Part shown: piece by piece, positions 3,834 to 24,739 of the stretch
Layout: every line of letters starts with the position of its first letter
Position numbering within the stretch: position 1 is the stretch's first letter
Sequence record: NC_061445.1
Strand: one strand, 5' to 3'
Length of the DNA stretch: 64,000 nt
The notes under the pieces: generated by a model
What the model saw: the letters and a program-made list of their open reading frames with translations, nothing else
The model's database searches: none
What the model was told of the DNA's origin: nothing
Translations under genes and position numbers: made by a program

Positions 3834-4348
3834 CGCAATGCCCTCAAATCATTCAACTCCGTGTTGCCTTGAGCATTCGGGGTTGTATAAAGAGAACTGG
3901 ATATGCTCTGCAATCGCAGACCGAGCTTCTCAAGTTCCTGCTGGTTCCCGCCCAACTTATCAAGCACTTCGCGCATAAGGTCGACTGAGCTTTGATGGTC
4001 ACGGGACTGCTGAGAGATGATACGTTCAAAGCGCTGCATCGCACGAAGAACAGAGTTCAAGCCCTCTTTCATATCCAAATTATCGACTGGCGCGGAGTCG
4101 GAGATTGCTTGAATCATCCGCATCATTTGCGCCAAGTCGGCTTGCAGCAGACCATCATCTGGATTGATAGTGGCCGCTGCTGCTTCCAGCTCTGCGTTCC
4201 GCGACTTCAACTGCTCCAGCTCCTCAAGCTGAGGAAGCAGTTTCAACCAAACGTAGGCACCGCCCGCGATTAGTAGAACAACAGAGAAGACAGTCGCGTA
4301 GTTGGACGCAAGCAACTTGTCTAAAATATCCGCCCACATTATATTCAA
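3830..4348 (-). CDS. Membrane-anchored coiled-coil protein (172 aa)
   Basis: N-terminal hydrophobic helix YATVFSVVLLIAGGAYVWL followed by heptad-rich sequence; ATGA coupling on both sides. Confidence 0.7.
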   Translation of the reverse strand: MNIMWADILDKLLASNYATVFSVVLLIAGGAYVWLKLLPQLEELEQLKSRNAELEAAAATINPDDGLLQADLAQMMRMIQAISDSAPVDNLDMKEGLNSVLRAMQRFERIISQQSRDHQSSVDLMREVLDKLGGNQQELEKLGLRLQSISSSLYTTPNAQGNTELNDLRALR

Positions 4349-4629
4349 CCCTTACAGGTGTTATCGTTCAGGTCGACGATGACCCGTTCGGCACCTGGTT
4401 CGTTTACGTCAGTGGTTTTGTACGTGTGCGCCATCCGAGGCTTGAACTCTAAGCAGCTTTGCCCGTAACGACCATCGACAACACAAATGGCCGACAAGCA
4501 ACTGACATCTTCCTTGAGAATTAAGTTTTCAGGAGATTGGTTAACACTCCTAACAGCAGTGATCACGAAACCCACCACAGCGAGAGAAATGACAACCACA
4601 ATGGCAATCCTAATTCGCTTGGCTTGCAT
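4345..4629 (-). CDS. Small membrane-anchored Cys-containing protein (94 aa)
   Basis: Basic N-terminus, TM helix IAIVVVISLAVVGFVITAV, and four Cys in the soluble part; GAGG RBS. Confidence 0.7.
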   Translation of the reverse strand: MQAKRIRIAIVVVISLAVVGFVITAVRSVNQSPENLILKEDVSCLSAICVVDGRYGQSCLEFKPRMAHTYKTTDVNEPGAERVIVDLNDNTCKG

Positions 4630-4664
4630 TTCGGTTTCTACCTCATGGTCCTTTTATATGACTG

Positions 4665-4672
4665 AAATTAGC
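4665..4672 (-). promoter_or_regulatory. Putative late-promoter motif GCTAATTT
   Basis: Intergenic copy of an 8-mer that recurs shortly upstream of several structural operon starts. Confidence 0.5.
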
Positions 4673-4693
4673 GAACCACTTGAATAAAGGAGG

Positions 4694-5719
4694 TCATTCC
4701 TCCAATACTCCGCTAATCTCCGAGAACATATTTTTGTACACTAAGGAACCATCTAGCTTGTCCAGTCTATCAACGAGAACATACAGTCTGGGTGACGTGC
4801 GGATATTAGCCCACGTCTTCTCATTACGGTCAAGTCCACCAAGCATCGGGACAATGACTATGCTGAGATTTTTGTTTGCCCTGACAAAGCCTACGTCAAT
4901 GTGCTTCCTGTTTATACTTCTGAACAGCCTGTTGATTGCGTCCAAACCCACAGGCCGATTAAATTCCGTATCACTGACTGTATTGACTAAGCTGATGAGT
5001 ATCCCTTTGTCCTTACCCTCGATCTCAAACAACGCAGCTTTCAGGTCAGCAACCGTCGAAGCGGAGAAGTATGAAACATCGTGGTTATAGTCCTTGAGAC
5101 AACTGCCAAGCGCACGGGCAGATTCGATATGCGCAGCATTGTCATCTCTAAGGATATACACAGGAGCGTCTGCTTGGTAAGTCCGAGCAGTCATGAGATT
5201 GATAAGATCACAAGAGGGCTTGCCTACTGTGGCTAAGCCCTTATTTGCAATGAAAAACTTATCTTTATACACATCGTAAATGTTTGGTGGCATGTACTTC
5301 ATGTAATCATCGTCCAGACTAAGAATCATTCGAGGCTTAGTTAACTGGACGACGAGTTGCATACTACGAAGCGATGCCCTATATTCCGTATCAGACAGAA
5401 CTCGACTAATCGGAAGGTATTGTACGACAACGAATCGGTCATCAATCGAATCGACAACCGAACGTATGAGCGTACTGCCTAGCGATGGTCCGGCAGAGAA
5501 TTGGGTAACGAGCATCAAGCTATCTTCAACTAAGCCTTTAGACTCTGACAGCGTGATACCGTTACCCGTTTGCTTTACCGAACGCTCCCACGTTATTGTG
5601 GGGTCGTCTCGCTGATCGGCATGTACATCAATTGCGCTACACCAGAGACAGGCTCCAAGAATGTAAGCAGCAATACGTTGTCTGGATCTGCTTCTGCCGG
5701 GTTGACGGTTTCCGGCCAT
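4694..5719 (-). CDS. Exported/lipoprotein-like protein with an ABC-substrate-binding (periplasmic-binding) type signature (341 aa)
   Basis: AGAGGAG RBS before ATG 5719 and a possible lipobox (ILGAC). VVQYLP...KPRMILSLDDD...FIANKG resembles ABC_sub_bind sensor domains. Confidence 0.55.
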   Translation of the reverse strand: MAGNRQPGRSRSRQRIAAYILGACLWCSAIDVHADQRDDPTITWERSVKQTGNGITLSESKGLVEDSLMLVTQFSAGPSLGSTLIRSVVDSIDDRFVVVQYLPISRVLSDTEYRASLRSMQLVVQLTKPRMILSLDDDYMKYMPPNIYDVYKDKFFIANKGLATVGKPSCDLINLMTARTYQADAPVYILRDDNAAHIESARALGSCLKDYNHDVSYFSASTVADLKAALFEIEGKDKGILISLVNTVSDTEFNRPVGLDAINRLFRSINRKHIDVGFVRANKNLSIVIVPMLGGLDRNEKTWANIRTSPRLYVLVDRLDKLDGSLVYKNMFSEISGVLEE

Positions 5720-6417
5720 AGGACTTCTCCTCTCTCGTCAGTGACGTAAGGAATGCCTGCCCCTTTGCCCAATCCATGACGCAAAGCCCATACTGTGTCG
5801 GCATTCTCTTGCACAAACACAAGCCCTTTAACCGTTGCCTCGCCAGTCGCGTTTTCCAGTGCAGTGACGCGCGAAGTAAGTAACTGTGCGTCAGACTGAA
5901 TAGTTCGAATCGCAGCGAGGTTCGAGTTAACGCGCTGGTTCATGTTGTTAAACATGGTGAAGAACGAGTTGTTCATCGCCGTGCGAACGCCGTCCGTATA
6001 GGACTTAGGAATCAGCTCATCGTTGTCAAACGTTGTCACGCCTGTACGAACGAGAACTTTACCGGTAAGACGTCCACCACTTGCGCTGATAATCTGAGGC
6101 GCTGGCAAATCAGCTTCGTCCCAGACTTGAACAGTGGTCATCACCGTGTTGTAGTCAGTCTCTTCCTGCCACGTATTTTTGTACGGAGCAGTAGCAGTCT
6201 TAGACTTACGGCGCAGAACTTTTTTATAGTTAGCGCTCGTGCCGTCTGCGATAATCCAGAGACCGTTCAGTGGAAAGACATGCGTAACAGGCTCGGCGAA
6301 CGCTAAGATGATCATAACGTCTGCGCTTACCTTGTACACGATATTGTTCGACGCTGACAGACCTTGCTGCTGGGCAAGACTAATCAACGTGTCCACGTAG
6401 TTAGTCAACTGGCTCAT
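5593..6417 (-). CDS. Virion structural protein (274 aa) with a coiled coil and the C-terminal shared HN-x-G-like module
   Basis: ORF track; the C-terminus WALRHGLG..PYVTDERGEVLWPETV...LLTF..PVSG matches the module in neighbouring genes. Confidence 0.75.
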   Translation of the reverse strand: MSQLTNYVDTLISLAQQQGLSASNNIVYKVSADVMIILAFAEPVTHVFPLNGLWIIADGTSANYKKVLRRKSKTATAPYKNTWQEETDYNTVMTTVQVWDEADLPAPQIISASGGRLTGKVLVRTGVTTFDNDELIPKSYTDGVRTAMNNSFFTMFNNMNQRVNSNLAAIRTIQSDAQLLTSRVTALENATGEATVKGLVFVQENADTVWALRHGLGKGAGIPYVTDERGEVLWPETVNPAEADPDNVLLLTFLEPVSGVAQLMYMPISETTPQ

Positions 6418-6886
6418 CCGAGACTCCTAACGTTTTAAGAAGGGTAGAACTTGAATCGGAGAAGGCCTTAGCAATAAGTTTGGCAGCAGCCTTATCGACG
6501 ACGAGAGTGCTGATACGCCCTTTTGTATTGCACACGATAGTCTGTGGCGAATACTGCGCGAGAGCAAGGGCGAATAGCAGATGATTACCCAAGTCACCAG
6601 AGATACTCACTTCAACGTCCAGTTCAGGCACGTAGACATTCTGGTTAATTGTGGCAACAAACTGCGCCAGCACTTCCGGGTCGTGCTCAGGAGGCGCTGT
6701 ATCATATCCTGCTACAAGATCAATCTGACCAGTAGCAGGGTCGTATGCGAAAGCTGATGGGTCACCGAGGATGCGACTGAATAGCTCGTCACTTACCTCG
6801 ATGCAGTCATCGTCTGTCTTCTCACGCACACGGCCGACAATCGAGTTATCGGCACGGTTGATTCTGATAATCGGCATATTAATCAC
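6401..6886 (-). CDS. Putative tail fibre assembly/chaperone-like protein (161 aa)
   Basis: Position directly after a fibre gene, size, and overlapping starts and stops. Confidence 0.55.
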   Translation of the reverse strand: MINMPIIRINRADNSIVGRVREKTDDDCIEVSDELFSRILGDPSAFAYDPATGQIDLVAGYDTAPPEHDPEVLAQFVATINQNVYVPELDVEVSISGDLGNHLLFALALAQYSPQTIVCNTKGRISTLVVDKAAAKLIAKAFSDSSSTLLKTLGVSDEPVD

Positions 6887-7700
6887 CTACCGCTGTGTAC
6901 CAGAAGTCCCAGCCAGCAGTGTTAGTGCCAGTAGACTTAATGGTGAAGCCACCTAACAAGGCGTTCTCATTCATCGCGCTAGTACCATCCAAGTTGTAGA
7001 GCGTGTATGTCTTCGCTTGGTTGAGTGCCGCATTCACAAACGTAATCTGAATGCTGATACAGCGGTTGATGAATGCCGTGTTAAACACAACGTGAATTGT
7101 GTCTGTGGTTGATGCGTTCACGACTCGACCCATGTTATGAGTAAAGCCAGTGTTCATATCACGGTTGCTGCCAACCCATGCGTTAGGGATAACAGCACCA
7201 GTCACAGGGTTCAGTGCTTGCGATACACGATACTCGTCGATAGCAGCATCACGACCTGGGCTACCGGTAGGACCAGTAGCGCCAGTAGGCCCAACAGCGC
7301 CTGTGTTGCCAGTAGCGCCTACAGGACCCGTGTTGCCAGTAGGACCGTTGCGGCCACGCGGACCACGAGGGCCCGGGCAACCGTCTTCACCGTCACGGCC
7401 ATCGCGTCCGTCAGCTCCGGGAAGACCGCGTAAGCCTTCTTTACCCTGCTTACCTTCGCGGCCAGATTTAAGCTGGTCAGCAGTGGGAAGACCTAGAACG
7501 TTTGATTGACTACCGTCAGGCCAGATGATCGTTAGCGTACCGGTAGTCGTATCGAACTGCGCACCCTGAGAGCCGGGAATCTTTGCAGCTTCTGCTGGGT
7601 CGATAAACGCAACAGCAGTGGCCGTCTTCTTACCTAACACTTTACCAATGGGGTCAGTGCCACCGTCGATAAGTGCAGGATTAATCTTCGTAAGAGACAT
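6879..7700 (-). CDS. Collagen-like fibre protein with a C-terminal gp53/H-lectin-like tip domain (273 aa)
   Basis: About 26 G-X-Y triplets; C-terminal VVFNTAFINRCISIQIT...FWYTAVG. Confidence 0.8.
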   Translation of the reverse strand: MSLTKINPALIDGGTDPIGKVLGKKTATAVAFIDPAEAAKIPGSQGAQFDTTTGTLTIIWPDGSQSNVLGLPTADQLKSGREGKQGKEGLRGLPGADGRDGRDGEDGCPGPRGPRGRNGPTGNTGPVGATGNTGAVGPTGATGPTGSPGRDAAIDEYRVSQALNPVTGAVIPNAWVGSNRDMNTGFTHNMGRVVNASTTDTIHVVFNTAFINRCISIQITFVNAALNQAKTYTLYNLDGTSAMNENALLGGFTIKSTGTNTAGWDFWYTAVGD

Positions 7701-7711
7701 GGGCTAAACTC

Positions 7712-7915
7712 CTAACCAGTCAGTGTTGTCCAATCAGGTTGTCCCGATTGTCCGGCTTCTGGGTTTTTGACTTTCGTGTTATTGACAGTCATACGAATCC
7801 AACGCACACTGCCGTCAGAATCTTGCCACCGGACTTTCGTTCCACCGTATGCTAAATTAGCTACCCATCTGTCTCTGCTCGGGTCTTTGAATGCTAAACG
7901 TGCATAAGCTGGCAT
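7712..7915 (-). CDS. Small Trp-rich structural/adaptor protein (67 aa)
   Basis: GGAG RBS; resembles the N-terminus of the 674 aa protein. Confidence 0.6.
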   Translation of the reverse strand: MPAYARLAFKDPSRDRWVANLAYGGTKVRWQDSDGSVRWIRMTVNNTKVKNPEAGQSGQPDWTTLTG

Positions 7916-7924
7916 AAGCTCTCC

Positions 7925-10804
7925 TTAACTATCCACTTCGTCAGGTTCCCAGCACAGGATAGGTCTGCGCCACACTTGGAATACACCGATAGGGTCTGCA
8001 CGACCTCCATCAATGAAGCAGTCCATAGTGCGTCCGCCTGAGTTCCCGCTCTGCATCAACGTTACAAGTCCTTCTGTCCATGACGCACGACCACCGGAGT
8101 CAGCTTCGAACAACCCTTCCCACACCATATCGAAAGCGCCTTTCCACGCATTGAAGTGATGTGATGAATAAGCACCGTCACCAACTGTACACAACACCAT
8201 GTACTGATAATCTTTCACACACGGAATGTTGTAGTTGTTACCACGAGGAACAGAAGTACCGTTAGCGTTGAAGATACACTCCCAGCCAGTACGGTCAGCA
8301 GAACCTGTAGTCAAGAACAGAGGACGACGAATGATCATCATGATTCCGTTCTCGGTACCGTTGTTACTAGATTTCTCGCAGTACGCATTGCAGCGCAGTG
8401 AGCGGTCAACAGTGAACGTGGTCGAGTTCGAGAAGTCACGGGTGTAGTAGTTCGATCCCCACTTAGGCAGATACTCTGCTGGTGGAACGAAGAAGTGACG
8501 TTCAGCGAGTTCAATCTCACCGTAACGGTCATAGGCAAACACGATGTACTCGTAGCCAGCATCAATTGGAATGTTATGGCCTTGAGTGCCTGGGCCGTTC
8601 CATTTCCAAACTACCTGCCAATCGTTTGAGTCACGCGTTGCTTCTTCGGTAATCAGATTGTATTTGCGTTCGTAGACGTGCCACACTTTCCCTTCTTCTG
8701 TGGTGTTGATATACAACGAGTTCGGGTCATTGATATTCCCGTTCTCAGTGCCGCAATAAATCTTATGCGACGCACCAGCAGAGTTGTAGATAGTGCCTGA
8801 CCCGATTGAACCGAACATATCCCAGTTCATCATCAGGTGAGAGGTACACATTTCGTTCTGGCCGCTACCATCAGAAGTCGTTATGAGATATTCGCACAAG
8901 TCTTTGAACGGATATTTAACGTAACGGTTGTTAGCACGGTTGACGACATGCACCCAGTCATGAGATTGAATCTTAGGCACAGGGAAGCATGGGTTAGTGA
9001 CGGACACGACGAAGGTCTTTGTCTCGTACATAGGCAGCTTCTTGAAACGATTATCTCTGATCGTTACAGTGTGCTCCATGCCCATTGTCGATGCACCGTC
9101 TTGACGGCCAAGCACTTTGTAGTACGACAGATGCGCACTCTTGGTGTTTTCGAACAGGCTGCTAATGCCCATGCTCATGTTACTCTCGCGGTCAGTGCCT
9201 GTCACATACGGATAACCGTTAGTGTCGAAGTCATAGCCGACAGAGAAGTAACTATCAGGGTCAGATGATTTAACGCCACGGTACATTTCATTCCATGCGT
9301 TACCTTCGCCCACACCTGGCTCACCAAACAGTGAGTACGCAGCGCGGTACACATACTGCGAACCAGCGTACACACGACTCGATGCACCGATGCGATACAT
9401 TGCAGCAGGCAGTCCGCCTTGCAAACGGTTAACGTCAGCAGTATCGTAAGACACGACATAGACGTAATGGTCAGTGCCGATAGCGTTCAGGTAAGCAGCA
9501 CACGCAGCAGCATTCGCAACGCCTGGGTTAGTTCCCTCAGCAGAAGCATGAATGTCGAACGTTCGGCGTTCAACCAGCGCAAGGTCAGACTTACGAATCT
9601 TGTAGACGTTCCAGCCACGACTATCAGTGTATCGTGTGCCATTGAAGATCGTGTACCCTGTATCGCCTGTATCAAGATAGCGCTGATAGCCTACAACGTG
9701 CGAGAAGATTCGGCTACGTGCTTGCAGTGACTGCGCGTTCTCATTCGACCAAGTGACAGACACATCACCGGCAGCCATACGGGCAGCCCAATCGTCAGGC
9801 TTGTACGGGTATGTCGTTACATCGAAGTTCACGCCATACGCATCACCGGGATTCACGCAGCAGTTATCACGATAGATGATTGCAGGGTCGAGCACAACAT
9901 CGTCAGGGATATCAACCTGTCCGCAATAGAACTGTTTCCACGTACCGGGCTGACCGCCAATCGTTCCCGGGCCGTTCTGCACTGTGCCTGTGAACTGATA
10001 TGCGGCAGAGAGTTCGTAGTTAATCTGGTTATGTAACTGAGCAACGTTAGTCCATGCGATGTGATTGCCAAACGCGTTGACGCTCTTAGCTTTCGCGTTC
10101 ACGGTAGACGCAACGTAGGCTTGACCGTTACTGCGAATGCCTAACGGGTTGAAGATAGCATTGAAGTTTACGTTACCTTCGAACGCACCTTTCTGCAACA
10201 CAATCAGGCTCACGCCGTTTCGATGCGCTTCACGCAAGGCATTGAGCATCGCTGTAGGCATACTCTGGTTAGTCGCAGACAGCAGCAGCATTACGCAACT
10301 GAACTGTTTGAAGTACCGGTAGTCGCCGTTGTAGCCGTAAGCACCAGCGTTAATCTCTTGCCAGCTATGCGCCAGCATGTCGAGAGGCATACGCTGCATG
10401 TAGCCTACAAGCTGTCCCCACGATTCCATCGCTGTGTCATCATTCACAGGCGCAAGGTCTGAGATGACGAGCATTGTGCTGCCCAGCGTGATGTTTGAGT
10501 TATAGCCGCGTTGCGTAAGCAGATGACGCAGCACACCCATGTTGTTAATGTTCTTATTGCGGTAGTTACCAAGCCAACCGTAGTTAGCATCTACCATAGG
10601 ACTTCCATCACGAATGAAGCGTCCATTCATGTAGACAGAGCCAAAGCCGCACACGTATGAGAGCGCATGACCGTCAACAACAAACGAAGTGAAGCGTGAG
10701 CTATCAACAGGCATTGCGTCTACTGCGGCAATAGATCCATCTCCAGGACTACCGCTGAATACGGGAGTAATGCCTCGCGCATATAAGCAACTTTGTTGCA
10801 GCAT
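7925..10804 (-). CDS. Large fibre/receptor-binding protein with an ILEI/PANDER (GG-type lectin)-like domain (959 aa)
   Basis: SRGWNV...RRTFDIH...AAYLNAI...VVSYD...MYRIGAS...RAAYSLFG matches the ILEI pattern; two C-terminal repeats. Confidence 0.7.
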   Translation of the reverse strand: MLQQSCLYARGITPVFSGSPGDGSIAAVDAMPVDSSRFTSFVVDGHALSYVCGFGSVYMNGRFIRDGSPMVDANYGWLGNYRNKNINNMGVLRHLLTQRGYNSNITLGSTMLVISDLAPVNDDTAMESWGQLVGYMQRMPLDMLAHSWQEINAGAYGYNGDYRYFKQFSCVMLLLSATNQSMPTAMLNALREAHRNGVSLIVLQKGAFEGNVNFNAIFNPLGIRSNGQAYVASTVNAKAKSVNAFGNHIAWTNVAQLHNQINYELSAAYQFTGTVQNGPGTIGGQPGTWKQFYCGQVDIPDDVVLDPAIIYRDNCCVNPGDAYGVNFDVTTYPYKPDDWAARMAAGDVSVTWSNENAQSLQARSRIFSHVVGYQRYLDTGDTGYTIFNGTRYTDSRGWNVYKIRKSDLALVERRTFDIHASAEGTNPGVANAAACAAYLNAIGTDHYVYVVSYDTADVNRLQGGLPAAMYRIGASSRVYAGSQYVYRAAYSLFGEPGVGEGNAWNEMYRGVKSSDPDSYFSVGYDFDTNGYPYVTGTDRESNMSMGISSLFENTKSAHLSYYKVLGRQDGASTMGMEHTVTIRDNRFKKLPMYETKTFVVSVTNPCFPVPKIQSHDWVHVVNRANNRYVKYPFKDLCEYLITTSDGSGQNEMCTSHLMMNWDMFGSIGSGTIYNSAGASHKIYCGTENGNINDPNSLYINTTEEGKVWHVYERKYNLITEEATRDSNDWQVVWKWNGPGTQGHNIPIDAGYEYIVFAYDRYGEIELAERHFFVPPAEYLPKWGSNYYTRDFSNSTTFTVDRSLRCNAYCEKSSNNGTENGIMMIIRRPLFLTTGSADRTGWECIFNANGTSVPRGNNYNIPCVKDYQYMVLCTVGDGAYSSHHFNAWKGAFDMVWEGLFEADSGGRASWTEGLVTLMQSGNSGGRTMDCFIDGGRADPIGVFQVWRRPILCWEPDEVDS

Positions 10805-10846: not shown

Positions 10847-12871
10847 TTAAGCAAATACTACGTTGGAAATGCTCAGGTAATCAAGATCGTTCGAGTCACC
10901 TCGGTCACCGCCACCTTGAACACGAAGCCAGATTTCTTGACCTGCAGGTATGTTCACATCAAACGTGAAATACTGATACACGCCACTACTGTTCCTCGGA
11001 CTCTGGGCAGCACCTTCACCGGCAGTGCGCTCGTAGATATCAATTGTGTGCCAACCACCGTTCTTGCCGTCATATACCCACGCGAAAGTGATCTGCTTGA
11101 TAGGTCGAGTGAAGAAGTTACCCCACTTGAACCAACCATTAACGCCACCCCAGATGTTCATGTAGTTTCCATCACGCGTCCATACTTGAGAAGCGTTAGG
11201 AGAACCTGTACCACGACCACCAGTCTGCTCCCATGCGTTAGGCTGCCACGGAAGTTCGTCTGAATCAGGAGGCTGTGCGTTACCACCTTCAATCGTCACA
11301 CAACGGTAAGGAACAGTGAAGTCACTCACGTTGATATGTGGCGGCTGAATAGGGCAGTACACGAAGTATGACCAATCGCATCCGATAGGTGCAGTCGCAC
11401 GAACTGTTATGTTAGAGCGGAGCACATGCTCAGGGTATTTCCAAAATTCGAGTGTGCCAGTACGTCCCGCAGCAACGATAGAAGTATCGAGTACGTTCAT
11501 GTCTTGGTCAAACACTTCGAACTTGGTATCAAACGAGTTCGCGGTACAAACAACAAGCTCGGCGCGAATGTCCGTCTGAGTTCCTAAAGCAAAATTATCT
11601 TCTGTGGTTGGATGACCGGCAGAGTAAACGCTGTAGCTCTGGCAAGGGTGCATGTATTCACGCGCACCACGTTCACCTGGGCAGTACAGGCTGTAGAAGC
11701 AACTCGCAAGTGAAGCAGCATTACCGAAGTCTTTGCTGACAACACGAACCATGATATCACACGCAACGTTTTGAGGGTCAAAGTAGAAGTACAAATAACC
11801 TTCGCCAGTACGTGCATCGAGCGTTGTCGCTATGCGGCGTCCAGACTGATAGACCTCAATGAAATCGAATGTTTCCCATGATGTGTAGTCGAGATACATC
11901 CAACCCGCTGTCCAACCGATGAAGTGATAGTATTCGAAAGCGTTAGCATTCTGAATACGTTCAGCGATAGGCCAGACAGTTGCGTGACACGGCGCTGGGA
12001 AGATTGGGCTGCCGATGTAGTCTGGATGAATGACGTCAGGGAAATTGATAACGTCATACGCAGCCTGACTATCAAGCGCCAACCCACCACGGTCAGACGG
12101 TGCTGCAAGACGTGGCGGATAGACTTCTAAGCTCCAGCCATAACCCTGCGTTGTACGCACACGAACCATGATGCGCATATCAGCAGCGTCAGGGTCGAAC
12201 TGGAATTTGATACGCGAACGCCCAGCGAGCTTGCCGCACGTAGAAGCAACACGCACACCCATGTGGTACACATCGACACTCGCACCAGCAGGCGCATACG
12301 ATGCGATCATGAGTTCAACGTAGCCCTCAATAGCAGGCATAGCGTAGTACGTTTCAGTGATGGTTGCACCACGTCCGTGTACAGACGCATAAGGCACGTT
12401 GGGGTTAGCATACGTTCCTAGTCCTGCGCGAGAAGCAACACCAGTAGGGTCGTATGATTCGATGGCCTTGATACCGGGTCGATTGATAGATCTACCAGTA
12501 GGAGGAGCAAAAGAGTTGACGAGGCCGAAGCCAGTACGACCAGCATCAGGCAAGTCAAACCCTGCAGGATAGCCTTTAAGGATATCGTACTTCTCACGAC
12601 CGCCACTCCCTATGCCATTGCCTGACCCTTTGGTTGTAGACGTCGGACCGCCACCACATGCACCAGTATCGAGATTAGAGCACGGGTCATCGTAAGTAGG
12701 GTCAAACGAGTCATCAATGTGATGCCAACGCTTGCCCCACTGATTACGCACACTGAATTTGTCTGGGCTTAATGGCGTCCAGTCTCCTTCATGTGTGCGT
12801 ATGAACATGGGCGTGTCCACACAGTCATGCCAACCGTTATTCGCAGCGTTACGAACGCGAAAACGAGACAT
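10847..12871 (-). CDS. Virion structural protein with three tandem beta-sandwich-like repeats (674 aa)
   Basis: Repeated E-x-Y...EVY..G.R(V/I)A(S/T)T...F.FDP...IMVRV units. Confidence 0.75.
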   Translation of the reverse strand: MSRFRVRNAANNGWHDCVDTPMFIRTHEGDWTPLSPDKFSVRNQWGKRWHHIDDSFDPTYDDPCSNLDTGACGGGPTSTTKGSGNGIGSGGREKYDILKGYPAGFDLPDAGRTGFGLVNSFAPPTGRSINRPGIKAIESYDPTGVASRAGLGTYANPNVPYASVHGRGATITETYYAMPAIEGYVELMIASYAPAGASVDVYHMGVRVASTCGKLAGRSRIKFQFDPDAADMRIMVRVRTTQGYGWSLEVYPPRLAAPSDRGGLALDSQAAYDVINFPDVIHPDYIGSPIFPAPCHATVWPIAERIQNANAFEYYHFIGWTAGWMYLDYTSWETFDFIEVYQSGRRIATTLDARTGEGYLYFYFDPQNVACDIMVRVVSKDFGNAASLASCFYSLYCPGERGAREYMHPCQSYSVYSAGHPTTEDNFALGTQTDIRAELVVCTANSFDTKFEVFDQDMNVLDTSIVAAGRTGTLEFWKYPEHVLRSNITVRATAPIGCDWSYFVYCPIQPPHINVSDFTVPYRCVTIEGGNAQPPDSDELPWQPNAWEQTGGRGTGSPNASQVWTRDGNYMNIWGGVNGWFKWGNFFTRPIKQITFAWVYDGKNGGWHTIDIYERTAGEGAAQSPRNSSGVYQYFTFDVNIPAGQEIWLRVQGGGDRGDSNDLDYLSISNVVFA

Positions 12872-12880
12872 GCTCTCTCC

Positions 12881-13372
12881 TTACGGTCTCACCCAGATTG
12901 CGCCGGGACTAACCTCTTGGTCGATTGACGGGTCAGTGTCTTGCACGAACACCTGTACTGTACCGGGATTGCCTGGGGCACCGGTCGGGCCAGTAGGACC
13001 AGTTGGGCCAGCAGGACCACGATTGCCAACGTAACCCTGTTTACCGGGAGGACCGTCAGTGCCACGAGGGCCCGGACAACCGTCAGTGCCTCGACGACCA
13101 TCAGTACCCATAAGACCGTCGATACCATCACGACCGGAAGGACCAACGCCACCAGCAGGACCGTAGCCGATGCTATGAATCGTTGGCAGACCCGAGATTT
13201 GCAGCTTGCCGATGTTCGGGATATTGATAGCAAGCAGACCAGTCAGTGCGTCGAAAGAACCAGATAACTGGCTATCGTCTTCTGACGTGTCTACCGTGAT
13301 GCCACCTTGAGTTGCTACGACAGGACCAGAGGCATTGGCCTTGACTAGCGATATATCAACTTTTTCTACCAC
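12881..13372 (-). CDS. Collagen-like fibre protein (163 aa)
   Basis: G-X-Y tract; shared N-terminal FD..TG.L...GLPT motif; C-terminal GAIWVRP. Confidence 0.8.
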
Positions 13373-13381
13373 GTTGCCTCC

Positions 13382-14014
13382 TTATGGCCATGTGATGTTT
13401 TGATCTTTCGTAGGGTCTACCCATATCGTTCCGGCAGCTACGTTCCCAGGGTTAGTAGCACTGACGATGATAGACAGACGACCAGCAGGACCGGCGGGGC
13501 CAGTAGGGCCTGTAGGACCTGTGCTGCCAGTTGCGCCTGTAGGACCTGTACCGCCACGAGGACCAGTAGGGCCTGTAGGACCCATAGGACCAGTGCGACC
13601 ATCTGGCCCCGTAGGACCAACAGGACCCGGTAGACCATCACGACCGTCAGGGCCCGGGAGACCTTGCTCACCATCAGGCCCTATGCCACCATCACACCCA
13701 GGTTCTCCGGGAGCACCGTCTCGTCCATCGCGACCGTCTTTACCGTCAGCACCTGTCTCACCTCTACCGCCTTGACGCCCTTCCGGGATATCAGAAGCAG
13801 TAGGGAAACCGCCAACTTTCACTGTCTGACCGTTAGCAAACTTGAGCGTAAGAATACCCGAAGTAGCATCGAATGATGAATCAGCAGTGAGTTCTGACGG
13901 TACGTTTTCCTCAGATGGGTCTACTGTCAGAGTACCCAACGAAGCACGTACAGGAGTAGACGTAGACGAAGAACCTGCTTGAATGAGGCCAGTTTTTACT
14001 TTAATCAGACCCAT
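13382..14014 (-). CDS. Collagen-like fibre protein (210 aa)
   Basis: About 33 G-X-Y triplets; the same N- and C-terminal motifs. Confidence 0.8.
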
Positions 14015-15456
14015 TAGTTTTTCTCCGCTTTCGCAACGATATCCGTGTTGTGTACGAGCACATCACCCACGAAATAACAGTCAAATGGATCGACGTCGAT
14101 ATCGACTGTCTGCACTTGATCATCAACGCGGCGCATCTCGTAAACAGCTTGCGGTCCTTTGCGGCCTAAAACAGTTTGTCCAACAGTTACATCACGCGCA
14201 GGAACATAACGCCATGCAATGCTATCGTAAATCAGAACAGGGTGTTCGTGCGTGAACTTCTGTCCATTGATAACATAGTAGTGGTCTTCTTGTCCATGAC
14301 GCAACGCAACAACGTTCGCATTCACAGGCTTGCCTTTGAGACTAGGTGATGACCACTGACGGAAGTTCTTAGGCTGATTCGACATGCCCAGCAGACTCTC
14401 ACCGACGCGAAGATCTTCGACTGCTTTAGGTCCTGTTAGCGTGTGAACTACAGAGCCATAAACGATACAGCCGGACGTCGATGTATTCAGCGGGTTGCGC
14501 ACAACAACGGTCAAAGCAGAGCGCACTGTAACAGTAGGACGAGAGGTCTGTCCCATGTCAGTTACGACACAGCTTATAGTGCCTTTGATTGTACGGTCAG
14601 CGCCTAATCCTACACGCAGATAGAAGTTAACAATGCACGTCGAGGTTGTTGTAGCTTGAAGCGTCACACCCTCAGTAGTTGTGATAGACCATTGATACTT
14701 ATACGGACCTAAACCACCACGAGCATTGACAGGCAGATACGCAAGCGATGTAAACACATCAGAGCCTTGCACTGTACGCTGACCTACCATGTACAGGCTT
14801 GACACTGACGCAGCAAGAGGTGTTATTGTTGGCAGAGGAGGTGCTGGCGTGACGTTGCTGGTGGGGTAGAGCCACACGAACACTCGACCGTCAGTAGGCT
14901 GAGTAGCAGACTGAACAGCAGTAGTGATTGGCGCAGGACCTGTAGGACCTGTAGCACCCGCTATACAGCTTGGACCGTCATTGCCGCGAGGACCGTCGAT
15001 GCCAGTTGGCCCCGTTGGACCGTCCGGGCCTGTAGGGCCAACAGGACCTTCACGTCCAGTATCGCCCGGAGGACCGTCTTCACCGTCACGTCCGGGATCA
15101 CCTACAGGTCCTGTCTTGCCTCTGTTACCTATTTTGCCTGGGCACCCATCAGGACCAGTAGGACCGTCTCGCCCATCACGACCATCTCTGCCGGGCGCAC
15201 CGGGAGCGCCTCGACGCCCCGGCTTGCCTGTTCCAAACATAGAGATAGTCGGAAGTCCGGGAACGTTTATCACATCCCCGTTCTTCTTGATGAATACCAA
15301 CACACCTGTCTTGCTGTTAAATCTTACGCTTGCGAGTTGCGTTAAAGTAGCAACGTCGGTCGACTCAAACTGCAAGCCCCCGTCAACGCCGACAACGGAT
15401 TTACCTTCGTCGTTAGCAGTTGTTTCGATTTGCGAAAGTTTTAACTGTGTTGTCAT
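14014..15456 (-). CDS. Collagen-like fibre protein with an Ig-like domain and a C-terminal Hint/intein domain (480 aa)
   Basis: G-X-Y tract, then a PYKYQWS..Ig-like segment, then C1-IVYGS...THEHP...VHN-T. Confidence 0.85.
14047..14469 (-). other. Mini-intein/Hint domain (141 aa, Cys330-Asn470), no homing endonuclease
   Basis: Block [22 protein letters not shown], block B T-x-x-H (THEHP), terminal His-Asn followed by a Thr +1 nucleophile. Confidence 0.85.
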
Positions 15457-17789
15457 TTCGGTTCAACCTTAATGCACAAGTTACCAGAGAGCGTTGACCC
15501 ATAGCTTGTGATTTGTGCGTTAGTCACACGAACCTTAGCGATGATATCAATGAAGCCCTGAGGTTGGTTCTCTTTCAACACGGTGAACATCTGCGTAATG
15601 CTTGCGTTCGAATACGCAATCACTTCTGTCAGGCTAGTGTCAGAAGTAACAACGTTGAAGCCCGCGCTGCCAGTACCTTTCAGACCACGACCGTATTCAG
15701 CTTCTGAGGTGCCCGGCACTTTGAACGACAGAACATATTCGATATGCTCTTTGCCGCTTGTCGGCGCGAACCCAGGGCCGAGTTGACACTGGAAGTCTGC
15801 GATACAAGTAAGCATCACACCTTTAGTGAACTCGATACGTTGAGTGATAATCAGTTCTTCCGAGTCATCAACGTTTTGCTGAATGTTGTACATGTTCTTC
15901 GGATCAGCTTCTTCGGCAAGCGCCTGAGTGTTACTGATCTTCAATTCAGGCCACGTACCTTCAATCTTAATGCCCTCACCCTGAATGATTTCAGGAGCAG
16001 CGATAGGCACGTCGATAGGCGGCAGACCCTGACGTTTGAACATGTAGCCTGTAGGCGTAGGGATAGCGTCGATGATAACACCATCAACAGAACTATCTTT
16101 CGACCCTACTGCCATTACGTTCTCGAAGATTGTGATCTCAACGAGTGTGTTAGCAGGGATAGGCGAGGTCGTTTTCAACGCGCTGCCAGCAACCGTGAAG
16201 TCTTGCGTGTGCACCGTCAGACCACTCATGGACACAACGCAGTGCGCTTTGTTCAGAGGCGTAGTTGGCAGAGCAAATGTATCAGCATCATAAGGGAAGC
16301 GATACTGAGCAACACGAATACGAGTAGACCAGTTGGCGCGTTCTTCATATCGAGCTACATAGAAAGTGTATTTCTGACCAGAAGGAATTGCTTCGGTCAA
16401 TGTGACACTGTTCCCGTTCGTGAGCTTGTACACGGTTGTAGGCTGCCACGTACTACCGACAACGCAGAACACCATGTCAACGCTCTCAATCGGTTTGTTA
16501 CCGAGTTTGAACTGAGCAGTTTGACCGTCACCAACACCTTCGTATGTTTCAAACAGGACAACGTGACCTTGCGACGGTTCAACACGGAACTGACGCATAT
16601 CAAGCTGCATACGCTGTTCAGGGTAAGACGAAAGCAGAAGCTGATCGTCCACAACGCTATACGCAGTGCGCGGCTGGAGAATGCCTGATGTACCAAGCAG
16701 CAAGTCAGTTGAGCTATCGAGAATCTCGGACAGCGTGTAACGTAACTTGTCAGGAGTTGCTGTAGTCACAACAGAGCTAAACAGCATCTTGCCTGGTGGA
16801 ACGAACAACGTTCCTGTAGTCTGACGAGTACCACCAGCAACAGGTCCCCAATACGGCCGCACGTCTTTGCCGCGATAGAGCGCCCACGATTCAGGCACAT
16901 CGTTGTTCAGCGGCCACGGGATACCGGCACTCGGAGTTGTTGGGTTAGTGATTCTGCGCCACACAGCAATCGACGTTTGAGCAGACACAAACGGAATAGC
17001 ATCGTCCATATTGACGAGCTGACCATTCGTGTATTTGAAGTGACGACAAGCACCTGCGCCTGTTCCAGAGATTGTCTGGACGAGCACAACTTCATTCGCC
17101 TTCAACATCGAGAGGCTTGCGATCTTGAACGTGTTGGCATTGATGAATCCAGCAGAAGTAATCTGTCCGCTAAAGATTCGGTCATGCTCGCTGAATGCCC
17201 AGTAGTATGAGCCAGCACCGTAGCGATACGCAGTACCCGGAGAGCGTGTGCCGTCAGAGTTAACGTGCATATCAAGTACGGACACAGCGTTGAACACGTT
17301 GTCGCTCAAGCTAGGCAGATTCTGGAGAGTTGCCACGCTCGGAATCGAGGTGTAGTCTGCCATTTTCACAGCAAGAATCTTTTGGATGTCCTGCTGGATG
17401 TGTACAAGCAAGCTAACACGGCTGATAGAGTTCGGTACAGCGATGATAGGCTCTTCCAGAACAACGTGACCAAACGGTCTGTTGTCAGAGAGCATAATCA
17501 GTATCTCACCAACTCGTTTCAGCGCTTCACCCGCCAAATATTTGACTTTAATATCGAAGACAAATCGGGCACTGTTCTCGGTAAGAACCTGAACGTAAGA
17601 CAATGCACCCGACGCAAGCTCGCTGCCAAGTAACTGCTCTGGAACCACAGACGGGTTAGAGCCAACAAAGTCACCTGCTTTGAATGCTACTGGAGCTATG
17701 GCAAGTCCACCAGCATTCGCGTTCGCAACGGCCTGTTCTCCCTGAGGCGTTAATCGCAGCGCGTTAACGTAGATAGATTCAGTGGCCAT
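15453..17789 (-). CDS. Baseplate wedge/fibre-attachment protein with a tail-collar-fibre-like N-terminus (~778 aa)
   Basis: LRLTPQGEQAVANA..GG..I...AFKAGD N-terminus and internal GDGQTAQF-type repeats. The RBS favours ATG 17789 over the track start TTG 17792. Confidence 0.65.
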   Translation of the reverse strand: MATESIYVNALRLTPQGEQAVANANAGGLAIAPVAFKAGDFVGSNPSVVPEQLLGSELASGALSYVQVLTENSARFVFDIKVKYLAGEALKRVGEILIMLSDNRPFGHVVLEEPIIAVPNSISRVSLLVHIQQDIQKILAVKMADYTSIPSVATLQNLPSLSDNVFNAVSVLDMHVNSDGTRSPGTAYRYGAGSYYWAFSEHDRIFSGQITSAGFINANTFKIASLSMLKANEVVLVQTISGTGAGACRHFKYTNGQLVNMDDAIPFVSAQTSIAVWRRITNPTTPSAGIPWPLNNDVPESWALYRGKDVRPYWGPVAGGTRQTTGTLFVPPGKMLFSSVVTTATPDKLRYTLSEILDSSTDLLLGTSGILQPRTAYSVVDDQLLLSSYPEQRMQLDMRQFRVEPSQGHVVLFETYEGVGDGQTAQFKLGNKPIESVDMVFCVVGSTWQPTTVYKLTNGNSVTLTEAIPSGQKYTFYVARYEERANWSTRIRVAQYRFPYDADTFALPTTPLNKAHCVVSMSGLTVHTQDFTVAGSALKTTSPIPANTLVEITIFENVMAVGSKDSSVDGVIIDAIPTPTGYMFKRQGLPPIDVPIAAPEIIQGEGIKIEGTWPELKISNTQALAEEADPKNMYNIQQNVDDSEELIITQRIEFTKGVMLTCIADFQCQLGPGFAPTSGKEHIEYVLSFKVPGTSEAEYGRGLKGTGSAGFNVVTSDTSLTEVIAYSNASITQMFTVLKENQPQGFIDIIAKVRVTNAQITSYGSTLSGNLCIKVEPK

Positions 17790-17818
17790 CAAAGAACTCC
17801 TTGGGTTTTAACTCTCAT

Positions 17819-23871: not shown

Positions 23872-24293
23872 TACTGTGACCTCATAGCAAACGTAATTGA
23901 TTGTTTGTCTTCGAGCTTAGGACAACGCCATGTGACAACACACACGTAAGTCTGCTCGTATTGATCGCTCATGGTACAGGCTGTCTGCACGTTCGTCACG
24001 TCTTGCGTCAGACCGTTGTATGGGTCTTCGAGTGCGAGGCGCATGTACGTTGCAATCCAGTCTGCTGTAGTCTGGTCGAATGGGTCAAACAGGTATTGAT
24101 ATACGTCTGCACCAAAGTTCTCTCGCCACTTGCGGGAACGCTTTCTCGTACCGATTACCATGAGAATCTTCTGGACAATACTGTCCATGTTCTGCACGTT
24201 ATCACGCGGTTCAAGTTGAATCCACGCATTGATATCACAATAGATGCGCTCGCTTAGTGGCACGTCTATCAGTCGAATCCCGATTCCTGCCAT
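23871..24293 (-). CDS. Baseplate wedge protein, gp25/GPW-like (140 aa)
   Basis: SIVQKILMVIGTRKRSR.W..NFG..VYQYLFDP pattern. Confidence 0.85.
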   Translation of the reverse strand: MAGIGIRLIDVPLSERIYCDINAWIQLEPRDNVQNMDSIVQKILMVIGTRKRSRKWRENFGADVYQYLFDPFDQTTADWIATYMRLALEDPYNGLTQDVTNVQTACTMSDQYEQTYVCVVTWRCPKLEDKQSITFAMRSQ

Positions 24294-24583
24294 TAGCCAA
24301 ATCTCACGTTAGAACTACCATTTGATGCCGTGTCGCCGCAACTGTTAGGGTCACCTGCACGTTGAGCAGGCTTGCCATTGACACGTACACTTGAGCTTGA
24401 AGTAGCACTACCTGTATGTGGTGGTTTCTTCGGTTTCCAGTGCGGTCGATACTTGTCGCCTTGACGAACACTCCCTTTTCCATTAACAAGCACATTAGAA
24501 GATGCTTGCGCAGGAACGACAGGGAAATAGCCGCTATGTCCAGTAGACAAATCTGTGCCTAAACGAATAGCTTTCTGACCCAT
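24293..24583 (-). CDS. PAAR-domain spike tip protein (T4 gp5.4-like, 96 aa)
   Basis: AIRLGTDLSTGH, VLVNGKGSVRQGD, VRVNGKPAQRAGD, SCGD...GSSNV. Confidence 0.9.
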   Translation of the reverse strand: MGQKAIRLGTDLSTGHSGYFPVVPAQASSNVLVNGKGSVRQGDKYRPHWKPKKPPHTGSATSSSSVRVNGKPAQRAGDPNSCGDTASNGSSNVRFG

Positions 24584-24707: not shown

Positions 24708-24731
24708 CGCTTAATCTCCTCTGTTAGACAC

Positions 24732-24739
24732 AAATTAGC
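24732..24739 (-). promoter_or_regulatory. Putative late-promoter motif GCTAATTT
   Basis: Immediately downstream of a terminator and upstream of the baseplate operon. Confidence 0.5.

What the first reader, a model, noticed from the sequence alone, without database searches (positions are those of the whole stretch)
14014..14469. Intact splicing-type mini-intein/Hint domain at the tip of a collagen fibre
The last 151 aa contain Cys1, a block-B TxxH, and a terminal His-Asn followed by Thr. All catalytic residues for protein splicing are therefore present, with only a 10-residue C-extein ([10 protein letters not shown]) and no endonuclease. This looks domesticated rather than selfish. It could be an auto-removed folding/trimerisation chaperone, a way to splice a short tag onto the fibre, or a Hedgehog/BIL-like thioester activation that ligates the fibre C-terminus to another nucleophile (a virion protein or a small molecule).
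Basis: partly seen in the sequence, partly recalled or inferred. Interest (0 to 1): 0.7.

Follow-up and report, generated by a model that had tools for sequence, protein, structure and literature searches.

The report
Self-cleaving Hint domain capping phage fibre
The last 151 residues of a collagen-like tail-fibre protein of an Erwinia jumbo phage are a real, catalytically intact intein-like (Hint/BIL) domain followed by a short lysine-bearing tail, most likely a module that cuts itself off the finished fibre, and it belongs to a large uncharacterised group of such caps on phage fibre proteins.

Summary
The window is Erwinia phage pEa_SNUABM_3, an Alexandravirus and 'hairy' jumbo myovirus. Gene gp111 (14014-15456, minus strand, 480 aa) has five parts: an N-terminal domain, 29 uninterrupted G-X-Y triplets, an Ig-like beta-sandwich, a variable linker ending in Gly329, and a 141-aa Hint domain (Cys330...Thr402-x-x-His405...His469-Asn470) followed by [10 protein letters not shown].

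The AlphaFold model has pLDDT 91. The best solved matches are two bacterial intein-like (BIL) domains, from Clostridium thermocellum (2LWY) and from Tetrahymena (BIL2), ahead of mini-inteins and Hedgehog. All catalytic residues are invariant in 20 orthologues.

It does not behave as a canonical intein:
- The +1 residue is not conserved across the clade.
- There is no real C-extein.
- The orthologue in Dickeya phage JA11 has no Hint at all and ends six residues before the junction.

Two results are new:
- 111 of 180 Hint ends in the relatives lie 1-20 residues from the protein C-terminus, and none lies at it.
- 95 of 99 short tails contain lysine and 90 contain exactly one (about 27 expected). 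44 of 69 internal junctions have Lys at +1.

Best reading: a domesticated, self-removing BIL-type module, possibly resolved through the tail lysine as in BIL2. Processing itself is untested.

The parts
14014..15456 (-). gp111, 480-aa collagen-like fibre protein ending in a Hint domain (stop codon included)
   Evidence: ORF. Identical to YP_010301224 'virion structural protein'. phrog_38766 E 2.7e-255.
15229..15456 (-). N-terminal domain (residues 1-76), shared with the two downstream collagen paralogues; probably the attachment end
   Evidence: Alignment of gp111, gp110 and gp109. Small beta-rich fold with moderate pLDDT.
14932..15228 (-). Collagen-like region (residues 77-175): 29 uninterrupted G-X-Y triplets (77-163), then a short interrupted stretch
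   Evidence: Pfam Collagen E 1.4e-14. G-X-Y run at 77-163. Gly columns invariant in orthologues.
14491..14931 (-). Post-collagen segment and Ig-like beta-sandwich (residues 176-322), ending in the invariant ...RNP; probably the distal functional domain of the mature fibre
   Evidence: AlphaFold2 all-beta domain, pLDDT 73-91 for residues 210-322. Weak SprB-repeat hit. Present without a Hint in Dickeya phage JA11 gp096.
14470..14490 (-). Variable linker LNTSTSG (residues 323-329) ending in invariant Gly329, the predicted scissile (-1) residue
   Evidence: Mean pairwise identity 0.43 with only Gly329 invariant. pLDDT <50 at residues 324-327. The -1 residue is Gly in 35 of 60 relatives.
14047..14469 (-). 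BIL-type Hint domain (residues 330-470): Cys330 (14467-14469), block B Thr402..His405 (14242-14253), His469-Asn470 (14047-14052)
   Evidence: All catalytic residues invariant in 20 orthologues. It is the only Hint in the window.
14017..14046 (-). 10-residue tail [10 protein letters not shown] (residues 471-480). It holds Lys476 (variable) and Lys479 (invariant, codon 14020-14022), the counterpart of the clade's single tail lysine
   Evidence: Disordered in the model.
14023..14026 (-). GGAG Shine-Dalgarno of gp110, lying inside the Ala477-Glu478 codons, 8 nt upstream of the gp110 ATG (14012-14014), which overlaps the gp111 stop (TAATG)
   Evidence: Sequence. Codons +7 to +9 are invariant at every nucleotide in 16 distinct orthologue sequences, while neighbouring codons vary synonymously.
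13382..14014 (-). gp110, 210-aa collagen-like paralogue without Ig-like domain or Hint
12881..13372 (-). gp109, 163-aa collagen-like paralogue without Ig-like domain or Hint

Best explanation
gp111 is a structural fibre protein of a 'hairy' jumbo myovirus. Its last 151 residues form a domesticated, BIL-type (bacterial intein-like) Hint autoprocessing module.

Proposed course of events:
1. The Hint folds. Cys330 attacks the Gly329 carbonyl in an N-to-S acyl shift, assisted by block-B Thr402/His405. This is inferred from the invariant residues and the fold.
2. The thioester is resolved by an amine or by water. My preferred version is that the epsilon-amino group of the tail lysine (Lys479) takes the acyl group. 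This is the chemistry reported for Tetrahymena BIL2. It is inferred from the clade-wide one-lysine tail.
3. Asn470 cyclises, assisted by His469, and frees the 15.9-kDa Hint. This is inferred from the invariant His-Asn and from the rule that at least one residue always follows it.

The mature fibre would then be residues 1-329 (33.5 kDa), with or without the 1.1-kDa tail peptide. The Hint would be a disposable C-terminal maturation cap. That role is comparable to the Peptidase_S74 self-cleaving chaperone of other phage fibres. It would be neither a selfish intein nor a lasting part of the fibre tip.
For: Fold and family:
-.
- The top solved matches are 2LWY (BIL, TM 0.70/0.80) and 6Y75/6TMM (BIL2, TM 0.70).

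Catalytic residues:
- Gly329, Cys330, Thr402, His405, His469 and Asn470 are invariant in 20 orthologues down to 54% full-length identity (56% in the Hint region).
- The Hint is as conserved as the fibre body, 0.67 against 0.61-0.70 mean pairwise identity.

Clade signature:
- Of 148 non-orthologous relatives, 136 have an aligned His-Asn.
- None ends at Asn, and 99 have tails of 1-20 aa.
- 95 of 99 tails contain Lys and 90 contain exactly one. The expectation from C-termini of phage ORFs is 26.6 +/- 4.3.
- 44 of 69 internal Hint ends have Lys at +1, so this is not a gene-end effect.
- In six other loci the tail Lys codon lies outside the next gene's ribosome-binding site.

Precedent: BIL2 splices through a lysine epsilon-amine to give an isopeptide (PMC8616854 section 2.4).

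Natural control: Dickeya phage JA11 gp096 aligns with residues 1-322 at 48% identity and ends ...RNPK. It lacks linker, Hint and tail.

Context:
- The same fibre module carries a Hint-ended collagen protein in 311-kb and 329-kb metagenomic phage contigs, Alcaligenes phage Afa-NA1 and Phage NCTB.
- In L023 a Hint-ended 1622-aa protein lies next to a Peptidase_S74-ended 2028-aa protein.
Against: - No experimental datum on processing was available. The Y3 virion proteomics paper is not held.
- The Pfam scores of the window protein are below the gathering cut-offs.
- The invariance of Ala477-Glu478-Lys479 in the orthologues is confounded by the gp110 ribosome-binding site.
- In short tails the lysine is usually near the C-terminus rather than at +1. 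The tail is disordered in the model, so its reach to the active site is assumed.
- A few relatives replace the block-B His with Gln or Glu.
- JA11 shows the fibre can exist without the module. An obligatory folding-chaperone role is therefore unlikely, and the benefit of the module remains unexplained.
Confidence: 0.6

Rival explanations
1. Canonical class-1 cis-splicing. Thr471 acts as the +1 nucleophile, a branched ester forms, Asn470 cyclises, and the decapeptide [10 protein letters not shown] is joined to Gly329 by a normal peptide bond. The fibre would gain a conserved C-terminal tag.
For: - Thr471 is present in 19 of 20 orthologues and Asp472 is invariant.
- Tail positions +3 and +5 keep their amino acid through synonymous codon changes.
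- All intein catalytic positions are present.
Against: - One orthologue (P0018) has Ala at +1.
- In the clade the +1 residue is Ala, Lys, Val, Leu, Ile, Phe and others in most members; Ser/Thr account for only 9 of 99.
- The closest relatives are BIL domains, which do not need a +1 nucleophile.
- Tails can be a single Lys.
Confidence: 0.15
2. Thioester-driven conjugation to something else. The Hint activates Gly329 and the fibre C-terminus is transferred to a lysine of another virion protein or to another nucleophile. This would resemble Hedgehog cholesteroylation or BUBL ubiquitin-like conjugation, and would anchor or cross-link the fibre covalently.
For: - BIL2 is reported to conjugate its N-extein to lysines of other proteins as well.
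- -1 Gly and flexible Gly/Ser linkers are common in the clade.
Against: - A conserved in-cis lysine and an invariant His-Asn are not needed for transfer to a foreign acceptor, and would compete with it.
- The shared N-terminal domain of gp109, gp110 and gp111 is the more likely attachment end.
- The Hint-less JA11 orthologue works without any such ligation.
Confidence: 0.1
3. Retained, non-processing tip domain. The Hint fold stays on the fibre in the virion and serves as a structural or binding module. The catalytic residues would be kept for stability or for a latent reaction on contact with the host.
For: - The Hint is as conserved as the rest of the protein.
- Some relatives have lost the block-B His.
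- No processing data exist.
Against: - Invariance falls on exactly the catalytic set (Cys1, TxxH, His-Asn) across orthologues and more than 130 distant relatives.
- A residue after Asn is always present.
- The JA11 orthologue lacks the domain altogether.
Confidence: 0.1
4. Selfish mini-intein remnant with no benefit to the phage, tolerated because it removes itself.
For: - Patchy distribution: present in Alexandravirus, Y3, Yoloswag and others, absent from Salmondvirus JA phages.
- An HNH endonuclease gene lies in the same fibre module.
Against: - No endonuclease domain lies in or next to the Hint.
- The position is at a protein end, not inside a conserved active site.
- The same architecture persists at 27-36% Hint identity (27-32% over the 161-residue stretch) in distant jumbo phages.
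- Hint ends 1-20 residues from the protein C-terminus account for 111 of 180 in the relatives, and they sit on many unrelated fibre or adhesin bodies: collagen, PKD, fn3, PASTA, Calx-beta.
Confidence: 0.05

Closest known systems
A-type bacterial intein-like (BIL) domain, e.g. Clostridium thermocellum BIL (PDB 2LWY)
   Same: - Best sequence match (E 2.5e-5 single sequence, 1.7e-15 profile) and best structure match (Foldseek E 1.2e-8, TM 0.70/0.80).
- Cys1, TxxH and a terminal ...VLVHN.
- No endonuclease.
- Tolerates non-nucleophilic +1 residues.
- Sits in surface or fibrous proteins rather than in housekeeping enzymes.
   Different: - Here the domain is at the extreme C-terminus of a phage virion protein.
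- It is followed only by a 1-20-residue tail with, almost always, one lysine.
- No biochemical data exist.
Tetrahymena thermophila BUBL1 BIL2 (PDB 6Y75 / 6TMM)
   Same: - Second-best solved structure (TM 0.70, E 3.9e-7; profile E 2e-10).
- It is reported to resolve its thioester with a lysine epsilon-amine of the C-extein, giving an isopeptide. That is the chemistry the one-lysine tail suggests here.
   Different: - BIL2 lies between two ubiquitin-like domains in a eukaryote and serves protein conjugation.
- Here the N-extein is a collagen/Ig-like fibre and the 'C-extein' is a decapeptide.
- Sequence identity is about 15%.
PT-HINT (Pfam PF07591), the releasing peptidase of polymorphic toxins
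   Same: It is the best Pfam family, aligned over 135 of 137 profile positions. 6 of 20 orthologues and 19 of 35 relatives carry the hit.
   Different: - The window protein scores below the gathering cut-off.
- PT-HINT precedes a C-terminal toxin domain that it releases (PMC3482391). Here nothing but a 10-residue tail follows.
Canonical mini-inteins (gp41-1, DnaB and RecA mini-inteins)
   Same: Same fold (Foldseek TM about 0.6) and the same catalytic positions, including Thr at +1 in this phage.
   Different: - Not inserted in a conserved host protein.
- +1 is not conserved in the clade.
- A natural Hint-less orthologue ends before the junction.
- BIL domains are the closer relatives.
Hedgehog/Hog Hint (PDB 1AT0)
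   Same: - C-terminal autoprocessing domain that activates the last residue (Gly) of a functional N-terminal part.
- Same fold (TM 0.64-0.68).
   Different: - Hedgehog has no terminal His-Asn cleavage step and carries a sterol-recognition region after the Hint (established knowledge of the family).
- Here His-Asn is invariant and only a short tail follows.
Peptidase_S74 intramolecular chaperone of phage tailspikes and fibres
   Same: - Functional analogy only: a C-terminal module of phage fibre proteins that cuts itself off.
- An S74-ended and a Hint-ended fibre protein are neighbours in L023.
   Different: - Unrelated fold and chemistry (Ser-Lys dyad; PMC7824862).
- No S74 hit in gp111.

Membership tests
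Hint superfamily | Hint beta-fold | tested here: met
   AlphaFold2 pLDDT 91.4. Foldseek gives 51 PDB matches at E<=1e-3; the 50 listed are all Hint-fold proteins (BIL domains, inteins, Hedgehog).
Hint superfamily | N-terminal Cys/Ser nucleophile and block-B TxxH | tested here: met
   Cys330 and Thr402-x-x-His405 are invariant in 20 orthologues. Cys1 is present in 60 of 60 relatives where aligned.
Canonical (class 1) intein | Inserted within a host protein whose two exteins form one functional protein | tested here: not met
   The C-extein is 10 residues. The Hint-less orthologue JA11 gp096 ends at ...RNPK, six residues before the junction.
Canonical (class 1) intein | Conserved Cys/Ser/Thr at +1 | tested here: inconclusive
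   Thr471 in 19 of 20 orthologues, Ala in one. In the clade Ser/Thr occur in only 9 of 99 short tails.
Canonical (class 1) intein | Terminal His-Asn | tested here: met
   His469-Asn470 invariant. His-Asn is aligned in 136 of 148 relatives.
Canonical (class 1) intein | Demonstrated protein splicing | not testable with these tools
   No biochemical or proteomic data were accessible.
A-type BIL domain | Closest by sequence and structure to BIL domains; Cys1 plus a C-terminal His-Asn | tested here: met
   2LWY is the top hit by phmmer, by profile and by Foldseek.
A-type BIL domain | No requirement for a nucleophilic C'-flanking residue; found in variable surface or fibrous proteins rather than in conserved enzymes | tested here: met
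   +1 residue spectrum. N-exteins are collagen, PKD, fn3, PASTA and Calx-beta. The definition is recalled from the BIL literature (Amitai et al. 2003; Dassa et al. 2004) and was not re-read here.
PT-HINT (PF07591) | Score at or above Pfam's gathering cut-off | tested here: not met
   23.9 bits (full protein) and 25.5 bits (domain) against a cut-off of 27.7. Some orthologues do carry the precomputed hit.
PT-HINT (PF07591) | Followed by a C-terminal toxin domain that it releases | tested here: not met
   Only [10 protein letters not shown] follows.
Hedgehog/Hog Hint | Sterol/adduct recognition region after the Hint; no Asn-cyclisation step | tested here: not met
   10-residue tail and invariant His-Asn. 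The Pfam Hint (PF01079) model does not hit the window protein.
Peptidase_S74 intramolecular chaperone | S74 domain with Ser-Lys dyad | tested here: not met
   No Pfam hit. The relation is analogy by position only.

The most novel reading that the evidence does not exclude
These phage fibre caps form a distinct Hint clade that carries out 'lysine splicing'. The Gly329 thioester would pass to the epsilon-amine of the single tail lysine, and Asn cyclisation would then discard the Hint. The fibre would end in a small isopeptide-branched peptide. Alternatively, the same activated C-terminus could go to a lysine of a partner protein. That would be an enzyme-free, ATP-free way of making isopeptide bonds in virion assembly, so far described only for the Tetrahymena BUBL system.
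Probability: 0.3. Interest if true: 0.8.

Novelty: new variant of a known kind. Interest (0 to 1): 0.6.

Why it matters
Hint domains are known as selfish inteins, as Hedgehog processing domains and as toxin-releasing peptidases. A widespread, conserved use as a C-terminal cap of phage fibre and adhesin-like proteins has been noticed only in passing, in database annotations. No paper in the searched library describes it.

If the domain removes itself, the mature fibre of the 'hairy' jumbo phages is a 33.5-kDa product, not the annotated 50-kDa protein. That changes how virion proteomics and cryo-EM maps of these phages should be read.

The one-lysine tail rule gives a specific chemical prediction that can be checked directly. 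If it holds, it would extend lysine-directed Hint chemistry from a ciliate curiosity to a large viral protein family. It would also offer small natural self-cleaving or self-ligating modules for protein chemistry.

Tried and rejected
- Literature: five searches combining Hint / intein / intein-like with tail fibre, collagen-like, isopeptide and phage found no description of this module. The jumbo-phage survey PMC7824862 mentions only S74. The AD1/JA paper has no collagen, intein or peptide data, and says the proteins forming the 'hairs' are unknown. The Y3 paper with virion mass spectrometry is not held.
- NCBIfam gave only collagen-adhesin noise and nothing for the Hint.
- The search for related loci with alignment A4 on genome contigs failed because no stretch was conserved enough. 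Two scans of viral contigs with distant relatives gave one locus each. A DNA-level census of the clade was therefore limited to seven loci.
- I considered that the conserved tail was only a ribosome-binding-site artefact. This is true for codons +7 to +9 in the orthologues. It is rejected for the clade-wide lysine.
- I considered a polymorphic-toxin reading and rejected it because there is no toxin domain.
- I considered a second Hint or intein elsewhere in the window and found none.
- The model's coordinates are not exposed, so the distance from the tail lysine to Cys330 could not be measured.
Full report
**What the window is.** Positions 12800-17800 are 100% identical to Erwinia phage pEa_SNUABM_3 (NC_061445, 266 kb, genus Alexandravirus, host Erwinia amylovora). 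The finding lies in gp111 (YP_010301224, 'virion structural protein'). This gene sits in a run of minus-strand tail and fibre genes. Upstream are a 1511-aa tail protein and a 778-aa protein (listed as a 779-aa ORF). Downstream are two short collagen-like 'tail fiber' proteins (gp110, 210 aa; gp109, 163 aa), then 674-aa and 959-aa proteins and further fibre genes. These phages, with Y3, AD1 and Yoloswag, belong to the 'hairy Myoviridae'. The proteins that form the hairs are unknown, and the tail-fibre proteins are named as candidates (PMC6143709).

**Checking the observation.** The ORF 14014..15456 (minus strand) gives 480 aa. Evidence that this is a Hint domain:
- Pfam gives PT-HINT (E 1.7e-5, aligned over nearly the whole model) and Hint_2 (E 7.9e-5). 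Both are below the gathering cut-offs.
- phmmer against PDB finds the C. thermocellum bacterial intein-like (BIL) domain 2LWY at E 2.5e-5, aligned through to the shared terminal VLVHN.
- A profile of relatives raises this to E 1.7e-15. It adds the Tetrahymena BIL2 domain (6Y75/6TMM, E 2e-10) and then inteins.
- AlphaFold2 on residues 320-480 with 32 sequences gives pLDDT 91.4 and pTM 0.86. Only the first residues and the tail are disordered.
- Foldseek against PDB ranks 2LWY first (E 1.2e-8, TM 0.70/0.80) and BIL2 second (TM 0.70). Mini-inteins and the Hedgehog Hint follow.

The domain is 141 aa, so it holds no endonuclease, and it is the only Hint in the window.

**Anatomy of the whole protein.** A full-length model, Pfam and the G-X-Y count give:
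- an N-terminal domain (residues 1-76);
- 29 uninterrupted G-X-Y triplets (77-163) with a short interrupted continuation to about 175;
- a conserved post-collagen motif;
- an all-beta Ig-like sandwich (about 210-322, pLDDT 73-91);
- a flexible linker LNTSTSG (323-329);
- the Hint (330-470);
- the tail (471-480).

gp110 and gp109 share the N-terminal domain, a conserved Cys within the collagen region and the post-collagen motif. They stop there. So the Hint does not sit on the collagen helix itself. It follows the Ig-like domain, which is the likely distal functional part.

**Conservation.** Twenty orthologues were found, 56-100% identical in the Hint region.
- They keep Gly329, Cys330, Thr402, His403, Glu404, His405, Pro406, His469, Asn470 and Asp472 invariant. 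Thr471 is kept in 19 of 20 and is Ala in P0018.
- The Hint is as conserved as the fibre body: mean pairwise identity 0.67 against 0.61-0.70. The linker is not (0.43), apart from Gly329.
- The tail looks very conserved (0.81), but part of this is not protein-level selection. The gp111 stop overlaps the gp110 start (TAATG), and GGAG lies in the Ala477-Glu478 codons, 8 nt upstream of that ATG.
- Codons +7 to +9 are invariant at every nucleotide in 16 distinct sequences. Codons +3 and +5 keep their amino acid through synonymous changes. The tail is therefore constrained as a peptide at +1 to +6, while Ala-Glu-Lys at +7 to +9 is confounded.

**The wider clade.** A search of 1.84 billion representative proteins with the 151 aa gave 304 hits at E<=1e-3. 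I analysed the best 150; two of them are orthologues of gp111, which leaves the 148 non-orthologous relatives used below.
- 136 have an aligned His-Asn.
- None ends at the Asn.
- 99 have only 1-20 residues after it.
- Cys1 is present in 60 of 60 cases where that end aligned, and the -1 residue is Gly in 35 of 60.
- The +1 residue is highly variable (A 23, K 16, V 9, L 8, S 8, I 8 and others). This clade has no conserved +1 nucleophile.
- 95 of 99 short tails contain lysine and 90 contain exactly one, although lysine makes up 3.6% of these proteins. Sampling C-termini of 91 phage ORFs with the same length distribution gives 26.6 +/- 4.3 tails with lysine, with a maximum of 42 in 2000 trials.
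- The last lysine lies within three residues of the C-terminus in 63 of 99 tails. Single-residue tails are Lys.

This is not a gene-end artefact. Among 69 internal Hint ends (tandem Hints or long downstream regions), 44 have Lys at +1 and 58 have Lys within 12 residues. In six other loci the tail Lys codon lies outside the next gene's ribosome-binding site, which often follows the stop.

The bodies capped by these Hints include collagen, PKD, fn3, PASTA and Calx-beta domains; 8 of the 35 scanned also match phage tail-fibre families. BFVD's best structural matches are Hint-containing proteins of uncultured Caudovirales and Phage NCTB.

**Context in relatives.** The same module (tail protein of about 1550 aa, protein of about 780 aa, Hint-ended collagen protein, then 210-aa and 163-aa collagen proteins) occurs in:
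- metagenomic contigs of 311 kb and 329 kb;
- Alcaligenes phage Afa-NA1;
- Phage NCTB, where the orthologue was deposited as 'putative phage tail protein, contains intein domain'. That record also has a 153-aa 'intein domain protein' and a 1304-aa 'large intein domain protein'.

The domain has therefore been noticed by annotators. I found no paper that analyses it. In L023 a 1622-aa Hint-ended protein lies next to a 2028-aa protein ending in Peptidase_S74, the classical self-cleaving chaperone of phage fibres.

**A natural control.** The Ig-like domain also occurs in the Dickeya JA phages (Salmondvirus), which gave no Hint match. JA11 gp096 (324 aa) aligns with gp111 residues 1-322 at 48% identity over its whole length and ends ...RNPK. 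It stops six residues before the Gly329/Cys330 junction and lacks linker, Hint and tail. The fibre body is therefore a complete unit that ends where the predicted N-terminal cleavage would end it. The Hint module is an add-on that can be absent.

**Mechanism.**

*Shown:*
- the fold;
- the intact and invariant catalytic set;
- the rule that at least one residue follows Asn;
- the one-lysine tail;
- the Hint-less orthologue.

*Inferred:*
- Cys330 forms a thioester with Gly329.
- The thioester is resolved.
- Asn470 cyclises and releases the 15.9-kDa domain.
- The product is a 33.5-kDa fibre, or 34.6 kDa with the tail peptide.

A hydrolysis-only model does not explain why His-Asn, a following residue and one lysine are kept. 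A canonical splicing model does not fit the +1 spectrum. The model that accounts for all the conserved features is transfer of the acyl group to the tail lysine, followed by Asn cyclisation. This is the lysine-epsilon-amine chemistry reported for Tetrahymena BIL2, the second-closest solved structure (PMC8616854). I put auto-removal at about 0.6 and the lysine-acceptor detail at about 0.3.

The benefit of the module is not established. Because JA11 lacks it, an obligatory folding role is unlikely. A transient cap on the distal domain, or a blocked or branched C-terminus, are possibilities.

**Rivals.**
- Canonical Thr471 splicing (0.15).
- Conjugation to a foreign acceptor (0.10).
- A retained, non-processing tip domain (0.10).
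- A selfish remnant (0.05).

Each is set out with evidence in its own section.

**Comparison with known families.** It works like, and is closest to, A-type BIL domains.
- It fails the membership tests of a canonical intein: no two-part host protein, and +1 is not conserved in the clade.
- It fails those of PT-HINT: below the cut-off, and no toxin follows.
- It fails those of the Hedgehog Hint: it has His-Asn, and no adduct-recognition region follows.
- It is unrelated to Peptidase_S74 and resembles it only in position and presumed role.

**Novelty and verdict.** The domain is a new variant of a known kind: a BIL-type Hint clade whose members mostly sit at the C-terminal end of phage fibre or adhesin-like proteins (111 of 180 Hint ends; the other 69 are internal) and are followed by a lysine, in the terminal cases within a short tail. 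Interest is 0.6. It would be higher if the lysine chemistry is borne out.

**Housekeeping.**
- I built a profile HMM from alignment A4 in /scratch for two scans.
- One script joined residues 1-329 to the tail, only to compute the mass of the predicted splice product. The string was neither printed nor saved.
- One search printed long raw tails of metagenomic proteins, more than was needed.

Noticed in passing
window 24708-26029: A 1.3-kb stretch between gp117 and gp118 has no annotated gene and no long ORF on the gene strand; the longest ORF is 127 aa on the plus strand (25605-25988). Most of it is conserved at about 74-79% identity in other Alexandraviruses. There is no Rfam hit and no tRNA.
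   Followed up: partly
window 12881-15456: Three tandem collagen-like paralogues (gp111, gp110, gp109) share an N-terminal domain, a conserved Cys inside the G-X-Y region (Cys105 of gp111) and a post-collagen motif ending in W-x-x-P. Only gp111 continues into an Ig-like domain and a Hint. Whether they form separate homotrimers or a mixed fibre is open.
   Followed up: partly
window 14012-14026: The gp111 stop and the gp110 start overlap (TAATG), and the gp110 Shine-Dalgarno GGAG lies inside gp111 codons 477-478. These codons are invariant at the nucleotide level in all orthologues, which suggests translational coupling.
   Followed up: yes
L026:3479-4453 (Dickeya phage JA11 gp096): Natural Hint-less orthologue. 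It is 324 aa, 48% identical to gp111 residues 1-322, and ends ...RNPK, so its last residue is a lysine.
   Followed up: yes
L025 (Phage NCTB) 2179-9438; L022 13632-15527: Related jumbo phages carry several Hint proteins in the fibre module. NCTB has a 506-aa tail protein 'contains intein domain', a free-standing 153-aa 'intein domain protein' and a 1304-aa 'large intein domain protein'. The 329-kb contig has a second 1304-aa Calx-beta + Hint protein.
   Followed up: no
proteins P0116, P0147, P0066, P0039 and others: Metagenomic proteins with tandem arrays of this Hint clade. The units are joined by His-Asn-Lys, one or more Gly, then the next Cys1. This layout is reminiscent of poly-BIL/BUBL loci. 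26 of 69 internal junctions have a Cys within 8 residues.
   Followed up: no
P0022 (nearest non-orthologous relative, 24-member cluster), P0026, P0052, P0134: The block-B histidine is replaced by Gln (P0022) or Glu (the others), while Cys1, Thr and His-Asn are kept. These are either attenuated or compensated variants.
   Followed up: no
L023 925-11869: A Peptidase_S74-ended 2028-aa protein and a Hint-ended 1622-aa protein are adjacent, with overlapping gene ends, in a 56-kb phage contig. Two different self-cleaving C-terminal modules lie side by side.
   Followed up: no
window 5593-6417 and 24293-24583: An HNH endonuclease gene (gp103) lies inside the fibre-gene block, and a PAAR-motif protein (gp116) lies next to the baseplate or tail genes, according to the RefSeq annotation. 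Coordinates were converted from the record (record minus 62000).
   Followed up: no
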